21,533 nucleotides of DNA from Octopus sinensis (GCF_006345805.1 NW_021823718.1:1-21533), one strand, 5' to 3'; numbered from the stretch's first letter, positions 128 to 20,302 are shown. Program-made: numbers and translations. The notes: generated by a model from the letters alone, not told the origin.

Positions 128-305
128 AACACACACACCACGCGCACACACAGCCACACACACACATATAAACATACACGCACATATATATATATATACA
201 TAAATACCGCACTCATGCCTACATATATTCATATAAATATATACATAAACACACATACACACACACATATACATATATGTATGTATGTATTTATGTATAT
301 ATACC

Positions 306-343
<38 letters not shown>

Positions 344-398
344 TGCATATATACACATGTTTGTATATGCGTGTGTGCCTGTATACATACATGCATAT
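128..398. repeat. Compound (CA)n/(TA)n/(TATG)n microsatellite tract
   Basis: Visible dinucleotide runs; they account for the HT/YI/CV-repeat ORFs at 98-500. Confidence 0.95.
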
Positions 399-560
399 AG
401 GGGAAGGTGTGGCTGTGTAGCAAGAAGTTTGCTTCCCAGCCACATGATTCCAGGTTCAGTCCCACTGCGTGGCACCTTGAGCAAGTGTCTTCTATTATAA
501 CCTTGGGCTGACCAAATCTTACTGAGTGGATTTGGTAGACGAAAACTGAAAGAAGTTCAT

Positions 561-632
<72 letters not shown>

Positions 633-838
633 CTGCCTGTATTTGTCCCCCACCACCGCTTGACAACCGGTGGTAATGTGTTTACGTCCCCGTAACATAG
701 CCGTTTGGCAAAAGGAACAGATAGGCTAATAGGCTTATAAAAAGTAAGTCGGTGTGTCGATATGTTCGACTTAAACCGTTCAAGGCGGTGCCCCAGCATG
801 GCCACAGTTAAATGACTGACACAAGTTAAAGATAAAAA
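399..838 (+). mobile_element. SINE family A copy 1 (tRNA-like head, CORE-like body, internal microsatellite)
   Basis: A-box-like TGGCTGTGTAG, B-box-like GGTTCAGTCC, CORE-like GGCACCTTGAGCAAGTGTCTT, internal (TG)/(TA) run, tail ...GGCCACAGTTAAATGACTGACACAAGTTAAAG. Aligns by eye to five other copies in the window. Confidence 0.9.
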
Positions 839-1003: not shown

Positions 1004-1650
1004 AAAGGGCTTAGTAAAATAAATTACTTTGCCGCATACTGAACTCATTAGAAATAGCAGCTAAAAAACTTTTTTTTAAAGCTATTTCTAATACTTAAAA
1101 AAAATCTCTCTCATATATAGTGTTTGCTTAATTCGAGGGCAAAATAATTTAATTAATCAATTTCACCAAGTGTTCAGTATGCAAAGGGACCATTCAAGGC
1201 GAATTCAAATTATTACATTATATAAAAGGCTTAGTAAAATAAATTACTTTGCCGCATACTGAACTCATTAGAAATAGCAGCTAAAAAACTTTTTTAAGGC
1301 TATTTCTAATACTTAAGAAAAATCTCTCTCATATATAGTGTTGCTTAATTCAACTCACAAAGTTTGGGGTAAGGACATCGAAAAATAAATGCTAAGGTTA
1401 TTTGTCCTACCCCCAAACTTTTGTGAGTTGAATTAAGCAAACACTATATATGAGAGAGATTTTCTTTAAGTATTAGAAATAGCTTTAAAAAAGTTTTTTA
1501 GCTGCTATTTCTAATGAGTTCAGTATGCGGCAAGTAATTTATTTTACTAAGCCCTTTTATATAATGTAATAATTTGAATTCGCCTTGAATGGTCCCTTTG
1601 CATACTGAACACTTGGTGAAATTGATTAATAATTAATTAATTTTGCCCTC
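996..1650. repeat. Foldback / long inverted repeat with an extra tandem sub-unit, between (TA)n tracts
   Basis: 1135-1377 is the reverse complement of 1403-1650 (25-nt spacer). 996-1133 directly repeats 1217-1350 (period ~221). (TA)n lies at ~925-1000 and ~1660-1686. Confidence 0.92.
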
Positions 1651-3086: not shown

Positions 3087-3427
3087 GGATCTTTTCGGTT
3101 TGAACGACAGTTTTTTCTAGCGGTGTCATATGAAATTGTCACCCATAATTATAACTCTAGTATCGATCTATTGCATTTTAATGTGTTTTAGGGTTAGGGT
3201 TGGTCAGGGTTAGGGTTAGGGGTGGGGGAAAGGGTATCTTTTTTTCTTCACAAATGTAAATAAACCCAATCTGTTTCTTAAACAAGGGACATAAACTATA
3301 GACTTTTCTCAATAAAGTCAAGAGAAAAAGATGTTTTATAATCACATTCTACCAGTATACGAAGTTTAAAAGTGTTTAGTTACGTGGAAATTATTTTTAA
3401 AAACTGCCGGTCAAACCGAAAAGATCC
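3087..3427. mobile_element. MITE copy 1 (GGATC termini, possibly Merlin-like), internally deleted
   Basis: 29-bp TIRs GGATCTTTTCGGTTTGAACGACAGTTTTT / AAAAACTGCCGGTCAAACCGAAAAGATCC; perfect 8-bp TSD AAACTGGT (3079-3086, 3428-3435). Lacks ~90 bp present in copies 2 and 3. The superfamily call is an inference from GG ends plus 8-bp TSD. Confidence 0.9.
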
Positions 3428-4065
3428 AAACTGGTCAGTTTCATTTATATATCAATGCATGCACTGACAAGATAAATGAATTGAAAACGTACATCTGCGT
3501 TAAGTACATATGCAAGTCTGTGTGTACAACAATATAGATAAATGCATGTGGACATATGAATATGTATTAAAGCATATATATATTTGTGTAATAATAAGCA
3601 AAGCGTGTGCTCTCTTATCTATTCTCGCGCTAAAATAACTTATTGTATACAAGCCATTATTCAAACCACAAAGAACTTAACGGAAAAAATACATGTATAT
3701 AAACATAATATACGTGGGTAAAGAAATACGTGCCCGTTCTATCTTTTCATCGTCGCACCTGTAGTGTCAAATGTAGTTAAAACGGCAGGAATAATGCATG
3801 CACATGCAGACATCTATTCATGGTTGTAAGACATAGCAAGACATAATACAAAAAGAAAGAGACGAATATCTGCTGGATTCTCTTTGAAAAGAAAGAAAAA
3901 AATGCTTTTGTAAAGGTTTTATTTTTTTTTTTTTAAATTGTCTGAGATCGATCGAGTTGACTTCTGCTTTTTTCTTCTTTACTTGTGTAAAGATAACTTG
4001 GCTTTCTTTATTATGAATTATAGAGTCTTTTTGTGTTTTTTGTTTTCTTTATTATTCTATAACAA

Positions 4066-4445
4066 TGCGGGAAGGAAGGAAGGAAGGAAGGAAGGAAAGG
4101 AAGGAAGGAAGGAAGGAAGGAAGAAGAAGAAGAAGAAGAAGAAGAAGAAGGGGAGGAAGAAGAAGAGAAAGAAGAAAAAGAAGAAGAAGAAGAAGGAGGA
4201 GAAGAAGAAGAAGAAAGAGAAGAAGAAGAAGAAGAAGAAGAAGAAGGGGAGGAAGAAGAAGAGAAAGAAGAAGAAGGAGAATGAGTAGGAGAAGAAGAAA
4301 GAGAAGAAGAAAGAGAAGAAGAAGAAGAAAAGGAAGAAGAAAAAGAAGAGGAAGAACAACAACAACAAGAGGGAGGAGGGGAGAAAGTGGCGGCGGCGGT
4401 GGTGGTGGTGGCGGTGGTGGTGGTGGTGGTGATGGTGGTGCAGGA
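4066..4445. repeat. Polypurine simple-repeat block (GGAA)n-(AAG)n then (GGT/GGC)n
   Basis: Direct reading; produces the poly-K, poly-R, poly-F and poly-G ORFs. Confidence 0.95.
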
Positions 4446-5551
4446 GGTGAACTGTAAGAATTTTATAAGTTCTAAGTTCTATATTGGCCGTTGGAAATAT
4501 GTCAGTCAGTTTATATAATTCATCTTGTAATTCAAGTTGATCTTTGCGGTCTTGTGCTGTCGACGTTTGCACATATTATTAGGAACAATGCAAGAAACAC
4601 GCTCGTTGTTTGTACATTTAGAGACCTGCTAAAGACCAATGAATGGCTTTTGTTATGTCAGGACGCAACATGGCTCGCTCGCTCTTGTTGTTGTTTATCT
4701 TCTTTTCTTTTTTTTTTTTCAAACATTTTGAAATAATATTCAATGAAGGAGCAAAATATGTCTGAGAAAAAAAAGAGAAAAAAGAAAAAAAGGAAAATGA
4801 AATAACTGAATGAATGTTGAATGTTGAGTGAATCAATGAATGAATCGACCAATCAGCCAATGAGCTTTACACGAATAGAAATGACTCTGACAGCAATACC
4901 CTATTCATAAAACATAGTTCTCTTTCTCTTTTTATTTCTATTTCTATATCTCACACCCTCTTTTATTCTTATCTTCCATTTTCTTTCTCTATATCCCCCT
5001 CTTTTATTTCTTTGCCTTTTCTATGCATTACCTTCTTTATCTAAGTATTGACCGACTTTTACATTACTATCGAGTAAGAAAATTGAACAAAGGATTTTTT
5101 TTTTTGTATTTTTTTTTCTTTACCTTCTTCTTACAAATGATTGATATTTTAAGTTGCCGTCTGGTTTTAAAGTCGGTTTACTGACTGAACTTTCAATTAT
5201 CAATTTTACGTTGTCATTGCAAAGTTTAAAACAAAATTTAACTCACTGACTCGACTCAATCGTAAATTTGATATCCAAGCTATAATATAACAATATAAAT
5301 TATAACAAAAGCATTCCCGTAAGTAGAGGTGAAAGTTAAAGAAGTTTGAACGAAACTCCTCGACATAATTCCACGCAAATGTAATTATTTGCTTGCATAT
5401 CTTTTAACTTTGTGTTTTTTGCAGATTGCATGACTAAATGCGGGTCGATTTTTTAAAAACTGGGGACACCTCGGTAGGAATCTTGGCTACACTCATAAAA
5501 ACAACGCTTCGAGACTCATCTCGGCCAATCAATATTGATCTGTAAGTTCAA

Positions 5552-6199
5552 GGCGGTGAGCTGGCAGAACCGTTAGCACGCCGGGCGAAATGCGTAGCTG
5601 TATTTCGTCTGCCGTTACGTTGTGAGTTCAAATTCCGCCGAGGTCGACTTTGCCTTTCATCCTTTCGGGGTCGATTAAATAAGAACCAGTTACGCACTGG
5701 GGTCGATATAATCGACTTAATCCGTTTGTCTGTCCTTGTTTGTCCCCTCTGTGTTTAGCCCCTTGTGGATAGTAAAGAAATAGGTATTTCGTCAGCCGCT
5801 ACGTTCTGAGTTCAAATTGCGCCAAGGTCGACTTTGCCTTTCATCCTTTCGGGGTCGATAAATAAAGTACCAGTTACGCACTGGGGTCGATATAATCGAC
5901 TTAATCCGTTTGTCTGTCCTTGTTTGTCCCCTCTGTGTTTAGCCCCTTGTGTATAGTAAAGAAATAGGTATTCCGTCAGCCGCTACGTTCTGAGTTCAAA
6001 TTGCGCCAAGGTCGACTTTGCCTTTCATCCTTTCGGGGTCGATAAATAAAGTACCAGTTACGCACTGGGGTCGATATAATCGACTTAATCCGTTTGTCTG
6101 TCCTTGTTTGTCCTCTCTGTGTTTAGCCCCTTGTGGGTAGTAAAGAAATAAGAAACGTTAGCACGCCAGGCGAAGTGCTTTGCGTTATTTCGTCTATCT
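5552..6199 (+). mobile_element. SINE family B array: head + 3 x 184-bp units + partial head
   Basis: Head GGCGGTGAGCTGGCAGAACCGTTAGCACGCCGGGCG; units start at 5600, 5784 and 5968, each with B-box GAGTTCAAATT and ending GTAAAGAAATA; 6151-6197 restarts inside the head. The body (GGTCGACTTTGCCTTTCATCCTTTCGGGGTCGATAAA..AGTACCAG) resembles the Meta domain as I recall it. Confidence 0.92.
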
Positions 6200-6439: not shown

Positions 6440-6655
6440 ATTCTTATATTCTTTTACCTGTTTCAGTCAATAGACTGCGGTCATGCTGGAGCACCGCCTT
6501 TTAGTCGAAAAAAAAATCGGTTCCTGGACTTATTCTTTGTAAGCCAGGTACTTATTCAATCGGACTGTTTTTCCAAACCGCTATGTTACGGGAACATAAA
6601 CACACCAACAGCGATCGTCAAGTGATGGTAAGGTGGGGGACAAACACAGACACGA

Positions 6656-6735
<80 letters not shown>

Positions 6736-6895
6736 GACGGGCTTCTTTCAGTTTCCGTCTAACAAATCCACACACAAGACTTTGGTCGGCCCGAGGCTAT
6801 AGTAAAGGACACTTGCCCAAAGTGCCACGTAGTGGGACTGAACCCGGAACCAATGGTTGGGAAGCAAGCTTCTTACCAGACAGCTACACCTGCGG
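6440..6895 (-). mobile_element. SINE family A copy 2
   Basis: Full-length reverse-complement match including head, CORE-like segment, internal (CA)n(TA)n and tail. Confidence 0.9.
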
Positions 6896-7581: not shown

Positions 7582-7992
7582 GGGTCTTATCGGTTTGAAC
7601 GGCAGTTTTTTCTAGCGGCGTCATATGAAATTGTCACCCATAAGTATGACCCTAGTATCGATCTATTGCATTTCAATCTGTTTTAGGGTTAGGAGTGGGG
7701 GGAAGGGTATCCTTTTTTCTTCAGAAATGTAAATAAACCCAATCTGTTTCTTAAACAAGGGACATATTCATACGGCAAAGAATGCTTTCACCTCAATAAA
7801 CGTCATTGATTGGTTGAAATTGCAGAAATTGAAGAAAAAAAACAACAAATATCTTACAAACTATAGAATTTTCTGAATAAAGCCAAGCGAAAAAGATGTT
7901 TTATAAACACATTCTACCAGTATACGAAATTTAAAAGTGTTAAGTTACGTGGAAATTATTTTTAAAAACTGCCGGTCAAACCGAAAAGATCC
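7582..7992. mobile_element. MITE copy 2 (same family as 3087-3427)
   Basis: Same TIRs (left slightly mutated, GGGTCTTATCGG); perfect 8-bp TSD CTAATCCA (7574-7581, 7993-8000). Confidence 0.92.
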
Positions 7993-9273: not shown

Positions 9274-9995
9274 ATATTAGTTTCAAATTTTGGCACAAGG
9301 CCAGCAGTTTTCAGGGGTGGCGGAAGTCGATTGTATCGACTCTAGTATTTGATTGGCGCAATTTGAACTCAAAACATAACGTCAGACGAAATACCTATTT
9401 CTTTACTACCCACAAGGGGATAAACACAGAGAGAACAAACAAGGACAGACAAACGGATTAAGTCGATTACATCGATCCCAGTGCGTAACTGGTATTTATT
9501 TAATCGACCCCGAAAAGAAGAAAGGCAAAGTCGACCTCGGCGGAATTTGAACTCAGAACGTAGCGACAGACGAAATACCTATTTCTTTACTACCCACAAG
9601 GAGCTAAACACAAAGGAAACAAACAAGGACAGACAAACGGATTAAGTCAATTACATCGACCCGAAGTGCGTAACTGGTACTTAATTTATCGACCCCGAAT
9701 GGATGAAAGGCAAAGTCGACCTCGGCGGAATTTGAACTTAGAACGTAGCAGCAGACGAAATACCTATTTCTTTACTACCCACAAGGGGCTAAACACAGAG
9801 AGGACAAACAAGGACAGACAAACAGATTAAGTCGACCATATCGACCCCAGTGCGCAACTGGTACTTAATTTATCGACCCCGAAAGGATGAAAGGCAAAGT
9901 CGACCTCGGCGGAATTTGAACTCAGAACGTAACGGCAGACGAAATACCGCTAAGCATTTTGCCCGGCGCGCTAACGTTTCTGCCAGCTCTTCGCC
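9274..9995 (-). mobile_element. SINE family B array: head + 3 x ~184-bp units + deleted 4th unit ending in tail 2
   Basis: On +, unit boundaries TATTTCTTTAC at 9396, 9580 and 9765; head ends at 9995; 9274-9395 is a shortened unit with the GGCACAAGGCCAGC tail. Confidence 0.92.
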
Positions 9996-10828
9996 ATAGT
10001 GGCATCAATTACCGCCTGACCGACGTGCCTTGCCCCGCATCACATTTGATCAGACTGGAGCGTTTTTACTTTTGCTTCATGTATAAAGGACAATTCATTT
10101 ACTATCCGTAACTGCTGCGTAGAAGTCTAGGTATACTGTGTTTAACGACGCTCTGACATACGCTTTTGTGCGCGCACGCATGCATGCACAAACACATACG
10201 CACGCACGCACGCATGCACGCTCACCTACACACATTTGAATATGATAAATATCACAAAACACTGCTTTATTTGAGATATTAAATGAAACATGATTTGTTT
10301 TTTTTCATTAACGTGTAAGGTTATTACATAAATCATGGTGTCATTGTATACAAGACATGTGTTATCAGTTAATAAGAGACTGAAAATCTTTTTTCATTGT
10401 TTAAAGTATTACTTGTGTTATTTAATTGAAATTTGACATTTCTCCTGAGATTTTCGTTTCTTTTCCGACATTTTTATTTTCTGGGAATGGAAGGGTTAGC
10501 ATTCTGCATAAAAAAAAACTTATGTTAGATGACTGAGAACGCATGGTGTTTCTTTCGGTGTTGGTTAAAAACAAAACAAGAAATTCTGGTAAAAGGCGGG
10601 CGACTAGATTACAGGAACAATAGTAAATACATTGGTACTGATTTTAGTAACCCAGGATATAAATAAAGCACAAAGTCGATATTATCTTAGCGGAATTCTG
10701 GCAAAGAGCATAGAGAAAGGCAAGTACATAACAATTGCAAAAGTGCTGCCTTAAGGCAAGGGTACACTAGGCAGTTGCTTGGGTCCTCACGGGTCTTGGG
10801 ATCAATTTCGGATCTATGTATGTATTAT

Positions 10829-11215
10829 ACTTTGTACTTGTACTTGTAGCGACATTCACCCTGGGCGGGTTGGGTCGACTTCTTCTACTCATGGAAGAAG
10901 TTTCGTGGGAATATGTGGATTTCACAAGCGGTCCCCAACAATCCCGCATGTAGAGACATCCTGTTTGCCGCAGTATGTCCACAGACACAGGGACAGAACG
11001 ACTGAGGAGCCGCCGGTTGCCGAAACAGATACTCCGAGGATTTTCACCAGAGCCCCGTCTGCCGGGATGTGGCCCTAATACCACTCGGTGTCAGACCAAT
11101 CCGCCTTGGGTGGCCCTACCAGGAACCGAAGTTCCCGACGGCATAGCTCTGACACTACCCGTTGCCAGCGTCCCCACCACGGTGAGGAGGGGACGGATTT
11201 TGGGGACGCAAAATG
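10829..11215 (-). mobile_element. Non-autonomous RTE-clade (BovB/Expander-like) retroposon, ~385 bp
   Basis: 14-bp TSD TATGTATGTATTAT (10815-10828, 11216-11229); GC-rich against an AT-rich background; 3' tail (ACAAGT)n; 5' leader GAGCTATGCCGT...GTAGGGCCACCCAAGGCGGA resembles the BovB 5' UTR as I recall it; no RT ORF. Confidence 0.8.
11053..11209 (-). ncRNA. Candidate HDV-like ribozyme (nested double pseudoknot) in the retroposon 5' leader
   Basis: Hand-folded: P1 GCGUCCCC/GGGGACGC, L3 UCACCGU, P1.1 CA/UG, J4/2 GG-CAGA-C, P2 CCCC/GGGG, large P4 with a cUUCGg hairpin. P2 and P3 are weak. Confidence 0.45.
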
Positions 11216-11817
11216 TATGTATGTATTATGGCTTGCTGTCAATAAATAAATACTATTGAGCCCAATGCATTGATTTACCCGGAATCTCACCGATCTAGGG
11301 CCCAATTCTAATCTATGTATGCTGTGACTTGATGTCAATAAATAAATAATACAGAGCCGAATGCATTGGTTTGCTCCAGAGGCTGGTGATGTTGCTATGA
11401 CGGCTCTGCAAGTTATCTTTTCAGCTCCCTGATCGGTGCTGAAGACGGGATAAAGCAACCTCTATTTAGGCGGTGTCCACTTGCTAGAAATAAGAGTCAG
11501 AACTCCATTGAATGAATTCAGCAAAAATAATATCAGACAGAGAGGAAAAAAAAAGTAACAGCTAAAAACAAATCGTAATTTTGGTTGGGGCAAAATAAAA
11601 ATAAAGTCGCAAAAAAAAATTGCTACATTCCATTTAAATACCATAAATGATAAACTAATTAAACAAACAATATTTGAAGTGACTTAACTGACAACATATG
11701 TTTTGTACACAATGACAATATAATTTATATACCAGCTTTGCGCGTATGTGGAAAAAAAAATTACGGCGCGTACAATATCTTAAATAAAACAATGTTAGAA
11801 AGTATTTAGGATATTTA

Positions 11818-12176
11818 AATGTGTGTGTATGTGTATTGTAACTTATATTCGTGTGACTTTCAATGTGTCAGTGTAGACACACATACAAATGTATGTGTGC
11901 GTGTATGTATGTGTGCATGTATGTGTGCATGTATGTATGTGTGTATATGTATTATGTATGTGTGTGTATGTATGAATGTATGTAGTGTGTATGTGTGTGT
12001 ATGTATATTATAATCGAGTGCTATAGTTGTGAGTATATATAAAAAATATTGTAACCATTATCTGATAAGGAATCTAATACGATGGGTAGAGTGGATACAC
12101 ACACATACACACGCACACATACACATGCACACATACACACAAAACACGCAAACATATATATACACATACTCATACA
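11818..12176. repeat. Degenerate (TG/TGTA)n then (CA)n tracts
   Basis: Direct reading. Confidence 0.85.
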
Positions 12177-13829: not shown

Positions 13830-14083
13830 TGTGTGTATTTTCGTGTGTATGTGTGTGTGTGTGTGTGTTTTCGTGTCTGTGTTTGTACCACATAACCGCT
13901 TGACAACCGGTGTTGGTGTGTTTACGTCCCCGTAACTTAGCGGATCGGCAAAAAAAGACGATAGAATAAGTGCTAAGCTTATGTAATAAGTCCTGGGGTC
14001 GATCTGTTCGACTAAAACCCTTTAAGGCGGTGCTGCAGCATGGCCGCAGTGAAATGATTGAAACAAGTAAAAAATAATAATAG
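13830..14083 (+). mobile_element. SINE family A copy 4 (3' half only)
   Basis: (TG)n, then CCGCTTGACAACCGGTGTTGGTGTGTTTACGTCCCCGTAAC...GAAACAAGTAAAAA. Left boundary approximate. Confidence 0.88.
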
Positions 14084-15745: not shown

Positions 15746-16123
15746 GGCGTAGGAGTGGCTGTGTGGTAAGTAGCTTGCTTACCAACCACATGGTTCCGGG
15801 TTCAGTCACACTGCGTGGCACCTTGGGCAAGTGTCTTCTACTATAGCCTCGAGCCGACCAAAGCCTTGTGAGTGGATTTGGTAGACAGAAACTGAAAGAA
15901 GCCCGTCGTATATATGCATATATATGTATGTGTGTGTACATGTTTGTCCCCCCCCCCAACATCGCTTGACAACCGATGCTGGTGTGTTTACGTTCCCGTA
16001 ACTTAGCGGTTCGGCAAAAGAGACCGATAGAATATGTACTACGTTTACAAAGAATAAGTCCTGTGGTCGGCTAAAGGCGGTGCTCCAGCATGGCCACAGT
16101 CAAATGACTGAAACAAGTAAAAG
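15746..16123 (+). mobile_element. SINE family A copy 5 (near full length)
   Basis: GGCGTAGGAGTGGCTGTGTGGTAAG head, GGTTCAGTC B-box, GGCACCTTGGGCAAGTGTC, tail GAAACAAGTAAAAG. Confidence 0.92.
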
Positions 16124-16332: not shown

Positions 16333-16751
16333 GGATCTTTTCGGTTTGAACGGCAGTTTTATCTAGCATTTTCATATGAAATTGTCACCCATAATTTTGA
16401 CCCTAGTATCGATCTATTGCATTTCAATCTGTTTTAGAGTTAGAGTTCGGGGTGGAGGGAAGGGTATCTTTTTTTCTTCACAAACGTAAATAAACCCAAT
16501 CTGTTTCTTAAACGAGGGACATATTCATACGGCACAGAATGTTTTCACCTCAATAGACGTCATTGATTGGTTGAAATTGCAGAAATTGAAGAAAAAACCC
16601 CAACAAATATCTTACAAACTATAGAATTTATTCAATAAAGCCAAAAGAAAAAGATGTTTTCGAAACACATTCTACCAGTATACGAAGTTTAAAAGTGTTT
16701 AAGTTACGTGAAAATTATTTTTAAAAACTGCCGGTCAAACCGAAAAGATCC
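16333..16751. mobile_element. MITE copy 3 (no 8-bp TSD)
   Basis: Intact GGATCTTTTCGGTTTGAACGGCAG / CTGCCGGTCAAACCGAAAAGATCC TIRs; the flanking 8-mers CGGCATTG and TGAGGCTC differ. Confidence 0.92.
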
Positions 16752-17247: not shown

Positions 17248-17694
17248 TTCACACACATACTTCGATGATTACTTACACACACTCCGCGCACGTGTATATA
17301 TGTGCATGGTTGTAAGTGTATGTTTGTCTGAATTCACATAGAGAAAAGCTCCCCCCCTCTCTCTCTCTCTCTCTCTCTCGTTCTCTTTCTCACAGACACA
17401 TAAACCAAACACAAACTCTCTCTCTCTCTCTAACATACACACAAACACACTTACACACAAGCGTATGCACAGTCGTGTGGGGGGAATATGCTACGCACAC
17501 ACCTACGCACGCACATTCGGACATACACGTGCGTTCTGACACACATGCGCGGGCACACAGCATACGCATACATATACCCACTTAACACGTATTCAGTTAT
17601 ATACACAAACGCGAGCGCACAAACACACTTACATACACAATTGGCGCGCGCACACATATTTCCACACGCTTACCAACACACCTCACACACACAC

Positions 17695-17752
<58 letters not shown>

Positions 17753-18205
17753 ATATACATTCAGACATAGATATACATGTATATCTATCTACACTGATAT
17801 ACATACAACATAATTACATGTATTCACACACATACGTACACATGCGCGTACACATGGGCACGCGCATAAGCACACGCGCGCGCATACACATTCAACACAC
17901 ATTTCCAAACACACTCACTGATGACGAGCAACAAACAAGCGCGAGGAGACACATTTTTCATAGTCACAAGTACATGCACACACGTACACATACATATACA
18001 TATGCATACACACACACACACACACACACACATACGTATGCATACACCGACACACACTCACATGCATAAATACAAGCCAATGCAAGTACATATACATACG
18101 CTCGCAAGCTTTAGACACACATCCGCACGAGCACACACATGGACACACGCACTTGCATACCAAAACACACATACACGCGCACACACACATTCATATTTAG
18201 ACACT

Positions 18206-19901: not shown

Positions 19902-20302
19902 GGCACAGGAGCGGCTGTGTGGTAAGTAGCTTGCTTACCAACCACATGGATCCAGGTTCAGTCCCACTGCGTGGCACCTGGGCAAGTGTCTTCTACTAGA
20001 GCCTCGTGCCGACCAAAGCCTTGTGAGTAGATTTGGTAGACGGAAACTGAAAGAAGCCCGTCGTATATATGTATATGTATATATACATATGTATTTGTAT
20101 TTCTGTGTTTGTCTCCCCGACATCGCTTGACAACCGATGCTGGTGTGTTTACGCCCCCGTAACCTAGCGGTTCGGCAAAAGAGACCGATAGAATAAGTAC
20201 TAGGCTTACAAAGGATAAGTCCCGGGGTCGGTTTGCTCGACTAAAGGCGGTGCTCCAGCATGGCCGCAGTCAAATGACTGAAACAAGTAAAAGAATAAAA
20301 GA
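19902..20302 (+). mobile_element. SINE family A copy 6, nested in the hAT-like element
   Basis: Full head to (TAAAAGAA)n tail; possible TSD ATTCTTAAA (19886-94, 20303-11) offset by 7 nt. Confidence 0.92.

What the first reader, a model, noticed from the sequence alone, without database searches (positions are those of the whole stretch)
11053..11209. Candidate HDV-like self-cleaving ribozyme defining the 5' end of the retroposon
Seen (minus strand): G1 = 11209, only 3-6 nt inside the TSD-defined boundary. P1 GCGUCCCC (11209-02) / GGGGACGC (11175-68). P3 (U)CC/GG(U) closes L3 UCACCGU, which keeps the U...G at loop positions 1 and 6. P1.1: L3 CA pairs with the UG directly after P1 (CC/GG in HDV, so a compensatory change). 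P4 base CGGGuaGUG/CACauCCCG. J4/2 GG-CAGA-C (11061-57) fits CNRA with a putative catalytic C at 11061. P2 CCCC/GGGG. Established: HDV-like ribozymes process 5' ends of R2, L1Tc and some RTE elements. Inference: a ribozyme-headed, ORF-less retroposon that excises itself from host read-through transcripts. Weak points: P2 only 4 bp, a U-U in P3, P1 8 bp, an alternative pairing with a second CGUCCCC; this copy may be inactive.
Basis: partly seen in the sequence, partly recalled or inferred. Interest (0 to 1): 0.8.

Follow-up and report, generated by a model that had tools for sequence, protein, structure and literature searches.

The report
Probable ribozyme-headed short retroposon
A 381-base mobile-element copy starts with a stretch that can fold like the HDV-type self-cutting RNAs known to trim other retrotransposons out of host transcripts; it is a plausible new example of a known trick, but unproven.

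Summary
The insert boundaries are solid. A perfect 14-bp target-site duplication flanks it, and the joined flanks align without a break to a neighbouring paralogous repeat unit. G11209 lies 6 nt inside the boundary.

The minus-strand segment 11209-11053 carries all invariant nucleotides of HDV-like ribozymes and the correct P1-P2-P3-P1.1-P4 order. Its P1.1 pair is compensated, and the 99-nt P4 domain folds closed on its own. With the invariants required, a motif this good appears in 3e-4 of 276,340 shuffles of the element, and in 7e-6 of them at the 5' end.

It is still not a certified member:
- It fails the published strict descriptor.
- It scores 15.9 bits against Rfam RF02682, whose gathering score is 44.
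- A duplicated CGUCCCC allows an inactive hairpin that dominates the pseudoknot-free ensemble, unlike the sea-urchin control ribozymes.
- No homologue could be found, so covariation could not be tested.

Ribozyme-headed, ORF-less non-LTR derivatives are already known (R2 SIDEs, NARTc). If real, this is a new member of a known kind, probably in a cephalopod genome. Confidence is about 0.55 and interest is moderate.

The parts
11216..11229 (-). 5' copy of the target-site duplication, ATAATACATACATA
   Evidence: Identical to 10815-10828. The joined flanks align across this point to a paralogous unit.
11210..11215 (-). Six extra bases, CATTTT, between the TSD and G1. Either an untemplated or microhomology 5' junction, or an uncleaved leader. 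U11210 would be the -1 nucleotide.
   Evidence: Variable 5' junctions are reported for elements whose RNA is cleaved at its 5' end (PMC3774820).
11202..11209 (-). P1 5' strand, GCGUCCCC. The proposed cleavage site is 5' of G11209.
   Evidence: 8/8 Watson-Crick pairs with 11168-11175. The Rfam RF02682 alignment starts exactly at 11209.
11193..11201 (-). J1/2, AAAAUCCGU
11189..11192 (-). P2 5' strand, CCCC. In the alternative register it is GUCCC, 11190-11194.
   Evidence: 4/4 pairs with 11053-11056. The alternative register gives 5 bp with GGGGC at 11052-11056 (read from the sequence; duplex energy).
11189..11195 (-). Competing Alt-P1 strand, CGUCCCC. It pairs with GGGGACG (11169-11175) to give an inactive hairpin.
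   Evidence: Pair probability 0.81-0.98 in nested ensembles, against 0.02-0.08 for P1. This is the minimum-free-energy fold.
11186..11188 (-). P3 5' strand, UCC
   Evidence: Two C-G pairs plus a U.U with 11176-11178
11179..11185 (-). L3, UCACCGU. The invariant U, C and G are present. Position 3 is A instead of a pyrimidine.
   Evidence: Descriptor TYYHCG*Y from the PMC4870747 supplement.
11176..11178 (-). P3 3' strand, GGU
11168..11175 (-). P1 3' strand, GGGGACGC
11162..11167 (-). J1/4, UGGCAA. U11167 and G11166 pair with L3 A11183 and C11184 to form P1.1. With C11161 it reads UGGCAAC, against AGGCAAC in the RF02682 consensus.
11063..11161 (-). P4 domain. A 99-nt three-way junction closed by CGGG/CCCG, with an 8-bp GUGUCAGA/UCUGACAC helix and a C(UUCG)G hairpin.
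   Evidence: It folds alone to exactly this closed shape: MFE equals the centroid, -42.9 kcal/mol, z -2.47, 1 of 200 shuffles as good.
11057..11062 (-). J4/2, G-CAGA-C. The putative catalytic C is at 11061 and fits CNRA plus one base.
   Evidence: with the descriptor
11053..11056 (-). P2 3' strand, GGGG
10851..11052 (-). Non-coding body of the element
   Evidence: No ORF with a Pfam domain. No other copy in the window. The element is 58% G+C against about 38-40% in the flanks.
10878..10901 (-). 3' hairpin with an 8-bp stem, ACUUCUUC/GAAGAAGU, 28 nt upstream of the tail. Candidate recognition site for a partner LINE's reverse transcriptase (inference).
   Evidence: Predicted in both the MFE and centroid folds
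10829..10850 (-). 3' tail, GCU(ACAAGU)n-like microsatellite
   Evidence: TRF finds period 6, 2.8 copies, at 10832-10848
10815..10828 (-). 3' copy of the target-site duplication
11286..11380 (-). Neighbouring paralogous repeat unit, which serves as an uninterrupted 'empty site'
   Evidence: The joined flanks align to it continuously across the junction, with about 80% identity over 98 nt.

Best explanation
The insert at 11215-10829 (minus strand) is one copy of a short, non-coding, non-LTR-type retroposon.

Shown:
- It is flanked by a 14-bp target-site duplication.
- It ends in an (ACAAGT)n tail.
- An uninterrupted paralogous site lies next to it.

Inferred:
- Its first 157 nt (11209-11053) are, or descend from, an HDV-like self-cleaving ribozyme.
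- The element has no promoter of its own and is transcribed as part of host read-through RNA.
- The nested double pseudoknot forms from P1 (7-8 bp), P2 (4-5 bp), P3, a 2-bp P1.1 and a large three-way-junction P4.
- C11061 in J4/2 catalyses scission between U11210 and G11209, leaving an RNA that begins at G1 and still carries the whole ribozyme.
- A partner LINE's reverse transcriptase recognises the 3' hairpin and tail and copies the RNA into a new site by target-primed reverse transcription. The 5' junction it leaves is imprecise, here CATTTT.
- This copy may be slow or dead, because a duplicated CGUCCCC allows an inactive hairpin.
For: - All helices and junctions exist as described.
- All positions fixed in the published descriptor are present: G1, the L3 U, C and G, and the J4/2 C, R and A.
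- The two base-identity departures (L3 position 3 = A, first J1/4 base = U) pair with each other, so P1.1 is kept. This is a flip of the U-A pair seen in the RF02682 consensus.
- In a 501-nt scan against 4227 families, the only Rfam match up to E = 10 is an HDV-like family, RF02682. It starts exactly at G11209.
- The candidate is the only relaxed-descriptor hit in the window. The same descriptor gave 0 hits in 20,000 element shuffles.
- On the composite score, 3e-4 of shuffles reach it anywhere and 7e-6 reach it at the 5' end.
- None of 121 natural bacterial loci that share the 18-nt P3-L3-J1/4 core also has P1, P2 and CNRA.
- The P4 domain folds autonomously and closes exactly where needed, with z -2.47.
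- The insert boundaries are confirmed by the TSD and the paralogous empty site.
- Active R2 ribozymes tolerate a P3 mismatch, P2 mismatches and very variable P4 (PMC3774820).
- Ribozyme-headed non-autonomous elements are established (PMC3414825; PMC6765202).
- No tRNA, 5S or 7SL-like head was found.
Against: - It fails my implementation of the published strict descriptor, which recovers all four sea-urchin control ribozymes. The failing points are the P3 U.U, P2 of 4-5 bp instead of at least 6, L3 position 3, the first J1/4 base, and a P4 region of about 100 nt.
- The Rfam score is 15.9 bits against a gathering score of 44. In that alignment the 3' part is placed on the wrong bases.
- In pseudoknot-free ensembles the Alt-P1 hairpin has probability 0.9-0.98, P1 has 0.02-0.08 and P2 has 0. 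In the sea-urchin controls the P1 and P2 probabilities sum to about 0.9-1.
- The nested part of the HDV-like fold is 6.3 kcal/mol worse than the Alt ensemble. Four G-C pairs of P2 must make that up.
- Six bases lie between the TSD and G1.
- This is a single copy. No homologue was found in any reachable collection, so there is no covariation evidence.
- The whole 176-nt region is not unusually stable, with z -0.96.
Confidence: 0.55

Rival explanations
1. There is no ribozyme. The 5' region is only a G+C-rich structured leader. Its real fold would be the nested one: the hairpin CGUCCCC-U-CC-loop-GG-U-GGGGACG, the three-way-junction domain, and a closing CCCC/GGGG stem. The HDV-like reading would then be a coincidence, helped by the CGUCCCC duplication and by the reader's freedom in choosing pairs.
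For: - The MFE and ensemble favour the Alt hairpin, 0.9-0.98.
- The candidate fails the strict descriptor and the Rfam threshold.
- A very loose net is matched by 8% of shuffles and by about a dozen other sites in the window.
- Low-complexity tiles tie the composite score when invariants are not required.
- No covariation data exist.
Against: - With invariants required, chance reaches this quality in 3e-4 of shuffles, and in 7e-6 at the 5' end.
- The compensated P1.1, a CNRA placed directly after the P4 closing helix, and the J1/4 GGCAAC shared with a real HDV-like family are not needed by the nested fold.
- The position at the element's 5' end is where such ribozymes are found.
Confidence: 0.33
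2. The master element carried an active HDV-like ribozyme, but this copy is a dead relic. The P3 U.U, the short P2 and perhaps the CGUCCCC duplication would be changes acquired after insertion or at the junction.
For: - The deviations cluster in helices that the consensus could repair.
- The sow-bug R2 gives a precedent for inactive ribozymes in dead copies (PMC3774820).
- The Alt fold is dominant.
Against: - The invariant nucleotides are all intact.
- The TSD copies are identical, which suggests a young insertion.
- Similar deviations occur in active R2 ribozymes.
- This reading is a sub-case of the best explanation, not a separate origin.
Confidence: 0.2
3. It is a conventional SINE whose 5' part is a degenerate RNA polymerase III head (tRNA, 5S or 7SL-derived), and is not a ribozyme.
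For: - TGGCAACGGGT and GGTTCCTGG, about 39 nt apart, look faintly like A and B boxes (read by eye).
- The length and the tail are SINE-like.
Against: - ARAGORN finds no tRNA.
- The permissive Rfam scan of 10800-11300 lists no tRNA, 5S, 7SL or snRNA match up to E = 10.
- Each putative box departs from the consensus at several positions.
Confidence: 0.04

Closest known systems
R2 SIDEs and R2/R1 hybrid SIDEs of Drosophila (Eickbush & Eickbush 2012, PMC3414825)
   Same: Both are short, ORF-less derivatives made of a 5' HDV-like ribozyme joined to a LINE 3' end. Both are mobilised in trans and have variable 5' junctions. The hybrid SIDEs also make 14-bp target-site duplications.
   Different: SIDEs sit in specific rDNA sites and are cut out of the 28S co-transcript. 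This element lies in a dispersed AT-rich repeat, its partner LINE is unknown, it ends in an (ACAAGT)n tail, and its ribozyme is unproven.
L1Tc/NARTc and other Pr77-bearing elements of trypanosomatids (PMC3185411, PMC3383444, PMC4035085)
   Same: An HDV-like ribozyme occupies the first nucleotides of both the autonomous and the non-autonomous (NARTc) elements. These are dispersed in the genome and released from long co-transcripts.
   Different: In those elements the 77-nt head is also an internal promoter. The host lineage and sequence are unrelated, and nothing here suggests promoter activity.
[quoted passage not shown] 2011, as summarised in PMC6765202 and PMC3774820)
   Same: These are promoter-less elements transcribed by read-through. 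The ribozyme's G1 defines the RNA 5' end.
   Different: Those elements encode reverse transcriptase. This copy has no ORF with a recognisable domain.
Rfam RF02682, the HDV-like ribozyme of Faecalibacterium prausnitzii
   Same: It is the best and only Rfam match. Shared features are a 7-bp P1 starting with GC, CC-UC..CGU-GG for P3/L3, xGGCAAC in J1/4, and GGC after P4.
   Different: The score is 15.9 bits against a gathering score of 44. The P1.1 pair is flipped (A-U instead of U-A), there are extra bases in P3, and P4 is about 99 nt instead of about 13. The host is eukaryotic and the setting is a transposon.
Sea-urchin drz-Spur ribozymes (sequences in the PMC4870747 supplement)
   Same: The topology and invariant nucleotides are the same. 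They served as positive controls here.
   Different: They pass the strict descriptor, and their native P1 and P2 dominate the nested ensemble. The candidate does neither.

Membership tests
HDV-like self-cleaving ribozymes | Nested double-pseudoknot order: P1 5', J1/2, P2 5', P3, L3, P3', P1 3', P1.1/J1/4, P4, J4/2, P2 3' | tested here: met
   All segments occur in this order, with complementary strands.
HDV-like self-cleaving ribozymes | The few invariant nucleotides: G (R) at +1; U, C and G in L3; C..RA in J4/2 (descriptor in the PMC4870747 supplement) | tested here: met
   G11209; U11185, C11181 and G11180; C11061, G11059 and A11058
HDV-like self-cleaving ribozymes | P1 of 6-7 bp, closed by Y opposite G1 | tested here: met
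   7 bp plus a possible eighth pair, all Watson-Crick, with a G1-C11168 closing pair
HDV-like self-cleaving ribozymes | P2 of at least 6 bp in the strict descriptor, or at least 5 bp, often with mismatches, in R2 ribozymes | tested here: not met
   4 G-C pairs, or 5 pairs including a G.U in the alternative register. Below the strict descriptor and borderline for the R2 range.
HDV-like self-cleaving ribozymes | P3 of 3 Watson-Crick pairs directly next to P2 and P1 | tested here: not met
   Two C-G pairs plus a U.U. A P3 mismatch does occur in the active jewel-wasp R2 ribozyme.
HDV-like self-cleaving ribozymes | L3 = U-Y-Y-H-C-G-(N)-Y, and J1/4 starting with R | tested here: not met
   UCACCGU has A at position 3, and J1/4 starts with U. 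These two bases pair with each other.
HDV-like self-cleaving ribozymes | P1.1 mini-helix between L3 and J1/4 | tested here: met
   C11184-G11166 and A11183-U11167, both Watson-Crick
HDV-like self-cleaving ribozymes | Score at or above a curated Rfam gathering score for an HDV-like family | tested here: not met
   No match at gathering level. The best is RF02682 at 15.9 bits against 44, E = 1.9 for 501 nt against 4227 families.
HDV-like self-cleaving ribozymes | Native helices are the favoured fold (a Fold-Filter type check) | tested here: not met
   P1 has probability 0.02-0.08, P2 has 0 and the Alt-P1 hairpin has 0.9-0.98. The controls sum to about 0.9-1. Once P2 is credited, the two folds are roughly isoenergetic.
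HDV-like self-cleaving ribozymes | Covariation supporting P1, P2, P3, P1.1 and P4 among homologues | not testable with these tools
   No second copy in the window. No homologue in the viral, metagenome or prokaryote collections or in the protein index.
HDV-like self-cleaving ribozymes | Mg2+-dependent site-specific self-scission, abolished by mutating the J4/2 C | not testable with these tools
   This needs a transcription and cleavage assay.
Ribozyme-headed non-autonomous non-LTR retroposons (SIDE or NARTc type) | A short ORF-less insert with a target-site duplication and a LINE-type 3' end | tested here: met
   14-bp TSD, a paralogous empty site, an (ACAAGT)n tail and a 3' hairpin, with no Pfam domain in any ORF
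Ribozyme-headed non-autonomous non-LTR retroposons (SIDE or NARTc type) | 5' and 3' ends shared with an autonomous partner LINE | not testable with these tools
   No LINE in the window, and no access to the source genome.
Ribozyme-headed non-autonomous non-LTR retroposons (SIDE or NARTc type) | Copy 5' ends coincide with the ribozyme cleavage site, give or take junction noise | tested here: inconclusive
   In this one copy G1 is 6 nt inside the TSD. Only one copy is available.

The most novel reading that the evidence does not exclude
A genome-wide dispersed family of SIDE-like, ribozyme-headed retroposons that is not tied to rDNA, in what is probably a cephalopod genome. Its HDV-like core would be non-canonical but active: a purine at L3 position 3 paired to a U in J1/4, a U.U in P3, a 4-5-bp P2 and a 99-nt three-way-junction P4. 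The duplicated CGUCCCC would act as a built-in Alt-P1/P1 switch that gates self-cleavage.
Probability: 0.25. Interest if true: 0.6.

Novelty: new member of a known kind. Interest (0 to 1): 0.4.

Why it matters
If the ribozyme is real, it extends the read-through plus self-cleavage way of life of promoter-less non-LTR elements in two directions. It would reach a short non-coding parasite dispersed through the genome, and a lineage (apparently cephalopod or mollusc) for which I found no report of HDV-like ribozymes.

It would also be a natural test of how far the HDV-like core can drift and still cut. The departures to test are the flipped P1.1 pair, the P3 mismatch, the short P2 and the very large P4. 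Descriptor and Rfam searches would both miss it, which suggests current surveys undercount such ribozymes.

If it is not real, it is a useful caution. A G+C-rich leader with a short internal duplication can mimic the motif.

Tried and rejected
- **Rfam at gathering thresholds, whole window:** nothing.
- **Rfam permissive scan, whole window:** only low-complexity miRNA-like noise.
- **Another copy in the window:** blastn with word size 7 found none.
- **Spurious ORFs as handles to pull element copies from the protein index:** two searches of element ORFs found nothing. Eight exact ORF look-ups were absent. A translated SINE query, meant to reach the same genome, found nothing.
- **Exact and degenerate DNA patterns:**
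  - Viral contigs: 25-mer, 0 hits; core pattern, 1 chance hit.
  - Metagenome contigs: 27-mer, 0 hits; active-site pattern with P1 left free, 0 hits.
  - Genome contigs: 121 matches to the core pattern, of which only 2 have any upstream P1 partner. Both look like chance hits inside coding sequence, and none passes the relaxed tier.
- **tRNA or pol III head:** ARAGORN found none.
- **Literal-sequence search of papers to confirm the organism:** none. Papers on HDV-like ribozymes plus octopus: none.
- **Two key papers not held:** Webb & Luptak 2011 and Ruminski et al. 2011.
- **Rejected alternative, P1 from the second CGUCCCC:** it leaves no room for a P2 5' strand between P1 and P3.
- **Rejected alternative, P1.1 from L3 CC with GG 11166-11165:** it would use the invariant L3 C.
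- **Yardsticks:** I did not fetch or write out the human virus's own ribozyme sequence. I used a bacterial Rfam consensus and published sea-urchin sequences instead.

Full report
**What is there**

The window is repeat-rich, gene-poor DNA of about 38% G+C with many (CA)n and (TA)n tracts. No ORF over 110 aa looks like a real gene.

On the minus strand, a G+C-rich block (58% G+C from G1 to 10850) interrupts an AT-rich repeat. A perfect 14-bp direct repeat, ATAATACATACATA, flanks it at 11229-11216 and 10828-10815. The block ends in a hexamer microsatellite, GCU(ACAAGU)n, at 10850-10829.

When the two flanks are joined with one copy of the repeat, they align without a break across the junction to the neighbouring paralogous repeat unit at 11380-11286, with about 80% identity over 98 nt. 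The insert boundaries are therefore firm. The insert is CATTTT (11215-11210) followed by 381 nt running from G11209 to 10829.

Other properties of the insert:
- It has no inverted termini.
- No ORF in it carries a Pfam domain.
- No tRNA-like or other small-RNA head was detected.
- There is no second copy in the window.
- An 8-bp hairpin (10901-10894 with 10885-10878) sits 28 nt before the tail.

This is the anatomy of a non-autonomous non-LTR retroposon that depends on a LINE recognising its 3' end. The dependence on a LINE is an inference.

**Check of the observation**

- P1: GCGUCCCC/GGGGACGC, 8/8.
- P2: CCCC/GGGG, 4/4.
- P3: two C-G pairs plus a U.U.
- L3: UCACCGU.
- P1.1: CA/UG.
- P4 base: CGGGuaGUG/CACauCCCG.
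- J4/2: G-CAGA-C, with C11061.

I add an alternative register. In it P1 is the canonical 7 bp, C11189-G11175 joins P3 across the U.U, and P2 becomes 5 bp (GUCCC 11194-11190 with GGGGC 11056-11052). This is read from the sequence, with the duplex energy.

The 99-nt P4 insert is not loose sequence. Folded on its own, it gives one dominant structure in which the MFE equals the centroid. That structure is a three-way junction closed by exactly the CGGG/CCCG pairs that bring J1/4 and J4/2 together. It contains an 8-bp helix and a C(UUCG)G hairpin. Its energy is -42.9 kcal/mol, z is -2.47, and 1 of 200 shuffles folds as well.

**Is it more than chance?**

I took the published RNArobo/RNAbob descriptors for HDV-like ribozymes from the supplement of PMC4870747 and re-implemented them. 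The strict version recovers all four sea-urchin ribozyme sequences printed there but not the candidate. The candidate fails for these reasons:
- P3 has a U.U.
- P2 is 4-5 bp rather than at least 6.
- L3 position 3 is A, not a pyrimidine.
- The first J1/4 base is U, not a purine.
- The P4 region is about 100 nt.

The L3 and J1/4 departures are the two partners of one P1.1 pair. The pair is therefore conserved, and relative to the U-A of the RF02682 consensus it is flipped.

I then tested descriptors of different stringency:
- **Relaxed tier, admittedly fitted to the candidate.** It requires P1 of 7-8 bp starting with G, P2 of at least 4 Watson-Crick pairs, P3 with at most one mispair, L3 U..HCG(N)Y, a 2-bp P1.1, and CNRA plus 0-1 base. 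It has exactly one hit in both strands of the window, G11209. It has 1 hit in 150 dinucleotide shuffles of the window (6.5 Mb) and none in 20,000 shuffles of the element.
- **Very loose net, to limit post-hoc bias.** It is hit by 8% of element shuffles, by 0.45% at the 5' end, and by about a dozen other window sites. That net proves nothing by itself.
- **Composite log-odds score, which lets features trade off.** The real sequence scores 39.4 bits. With the three L3 invariants required, 81 of 276,340 shuffles reach that score anywhere (3e-4) and 2 of 276,340 reach it with G1 in the first 13 nt (7e-6). Without the invariants, 4 of 3,000 shuffles reach it, and two low-complexity tiles of the real window score one bit higher through long helices with nonsense loops.
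- **Natural-sequence control.** A scan of prokaryotic genomes found 121 loci that happen to contain the same 18-nt P3-L3-P3'...UGGCAAC core. Only 2 have any upstream P1 partner, which is the chance expectation. None satisfies the relaxed tier in 0.89 Mb.

Rfam gives independent but weak support. Nothing reaches a gathering score. In a permissive scan of 10800-11300, the single match up to E = 10 among 4227 families is an HDV-like family, RF02682, on the minus strand and beginning exactly at G11209. It scores 15.9 bits with E = 1.9, which is about 5e-4 per family for that stretch. Its P1, P3/L3 and J1/4 (xGGCAAC) columns align well. The model skips P4 and misplaces the 3' end, so J4/2 contributes nothing to the score.

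**Evidence against**

- **A competing fold.** The 5' strand of P1 is nearly duplicated 14 nt downstream (GCGUCCCC ... CGUCCCC). The second copy, which must be free to form P2, can instead pair with the P1 3' strand. That makes a simple hairpin.
- **The competitor dominates pseudoknot-free ensembles.** The Alt-P1 hairpin has probability 0.81-0.98, P1 has 0.02-0.08 and P2 has 0.
- **The controls behave differently.** In three sea-urchin ribozymes the native P1 and P2 probabilities sum to about 0.9-1.
- **The energy gap is modest.** The ensemble with P1 and P3 enforced and the P2 strands left open is 6.3 kcal/mol less stable than the Alt ensemble. Four G-C pairs of P2 are worth roughly -6 to -10 kcal/mol. 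The two folds are therefore about isoenergetic before any pseudoknot penalty or tertiary gain. This is permissive, not supportive.
- **A downstream competitor.** A G.U-rich downstream hairpin can also sequester J4/2 and the P2 3' strand.
- **No comparative data.** The decisive comparative test could not be run, because the source genome is not in any collection I could reach.

**How it most likely works**

The shown facts are the insert, the TSD, the tail, the empty site and the motif. The rest is inference from established behaviour of R2, R4/Dong, baggins, RTE and L1Tc elements (PMC3774820; PMC6765202):
1. The element lacks a promoter and is transcribed within host RNA.
2. The 5' ribozyme cuts between U11210 and G11209, using C11061.
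3. The released RNA keeps the whole ribozyme.
4. A partner LINE's reverse transcriptase binds the 3' hairpin and tail and inserts a copy by target-primed reverse transcription.

The six extra bases at the 5' junction do not argue against cleavage at G1. In R2 lineages where cleavage is at the element's own 5' end, the 5' junctions are variable, which is attributed to priming at chance microhomologies. R2 SIDE copies show the same variation.

The deviations seen here have precedents among active R2 ribozymes: a P3 mismatch, mismatched or short P2 and very variable P4.

**Comparison with what is known**

Functionally this is the SIDE/NARTc design, a ribozyme head fused to a LINE 3' end with no ORF. 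The general statement that some non-autonomous SINEs use HDV-like ribozymes is already in reviews.

Membership in the HDV-like ribozyme class is not established. Topology, invariant nucleotides, P1 and P1.1 are met. P2 length, P3 pairing, the L3 and J1/4 base identities, the Rfam threshold and the fold-dominance check are not met. Covariation and catalysis are untestable here. I therefore file it as a probable new member of a known kind, not a new kind.

**Organism**

A SINE-like unit present four times in the window (for example 6737-6895) matches my recollection of an abundant octopus repeat. That rests on memory only. Neither the protein index nor a literal-sequence search of papers confirmed it. 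I found no paper that links HDV-like ribozymes with octopus. A giant-squid genome survey lists hammerhead ribozymes among its cis-regulatory RNA hits and does not mention HDV-like ribozymes.

**Verdict**

My estimates:
- About 0.55 that the segment is, or derives from, a genuine HDV-like ribozyme.
- Perhaps 0.3-0.4 that this particular copy still cleaves.
- About 0.33 that it is a look-alike whose real fold is the nested hairpin.

Interest is moderate at 0.4. The mechanism is well known, but the host lineage, the dispersed non-coding carrier and the off-consensus core would be worth a cleavage assay.

Noticed in passing
window 445-640 (-), 6737-6895 (+), 15791-15947 (-), 19979-20112 (-); partner blocks at 648-741, 6526-6662, 13888-13981, 15954-16047, 20115-20208: A SINE-like unit (GGGCTTCTTTCAGTTTCCGTC...CCTGCG) occurs four times. 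Each copy is joined through an internal (CA)n(TA)n microsatellite to a second conserved block. From memory it resembles an abundant octopus repeat, so the window is probably cephalopod. ARAGORN finds no tRNA in it, and a translated query found nothing in the protein index.
   Followed up: partly
window 5552-6151 and 9353-9995: Two arrays of a 184-bp tandem repeat lie in inverted orientation, 90-95% complementary, and enclose about 3.3-3.8 kb (D8, D9, I1-I7). This could be a foldback-type element or a large inverted duplication.
   Followed up: no
window 1152-1342 / 1440-1630: A 191-nt inverted repeat, 92% complementary, with a 97-nt spacer (I6). It looks like a MITE or foldback hairpin.
   Followed up: no
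window 3210-3427, 7683-7992, 16440-16750: Another interspersed repeat of about 300 bp, in three copies. Copies match at 93-95% over individual blocks (D14, D16).
   Followed up: no
window 3938-4572: About 600 bp of purine-rich low-complexity sequence with strong GC and AT skew. It yields long artefactual K/R/E-rich and F/S-rich ORFs.
   Followed up: no
window 11230-11400 (-): The retroposon landed inside a local tandem duplication of a unit of about 95 bp (..AATGCATTSGGCTC..TATTTATTTATTGACA..ACATACATAGAT..). The uninterrupted neighbouring unit conveniently serves as the empty site.
   Followed up: yes
window 11045-11062 with 11022-11040 (-): Just downstream of the ribozyme, J4/2 and the P2 3' strand (AGACGGGGCUCUGG) can pair with CCUCGGAGUAUCUGUUU in a G.U-rich hairpin. 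This is a second possible competitor, or a switch, for P2.
   Followed up: partly
window 237-400, 11877-12142, 17691-18158 and similar: The permissive Rfam scan lists dozens of sub-threshold 'miRNA' matches (mir-297, mir-3149, mir-466 and others). All fall on (CA)n, (TA)n or (GT)n microsatellites and are low-complexity artefacts.
   Followed up: yes
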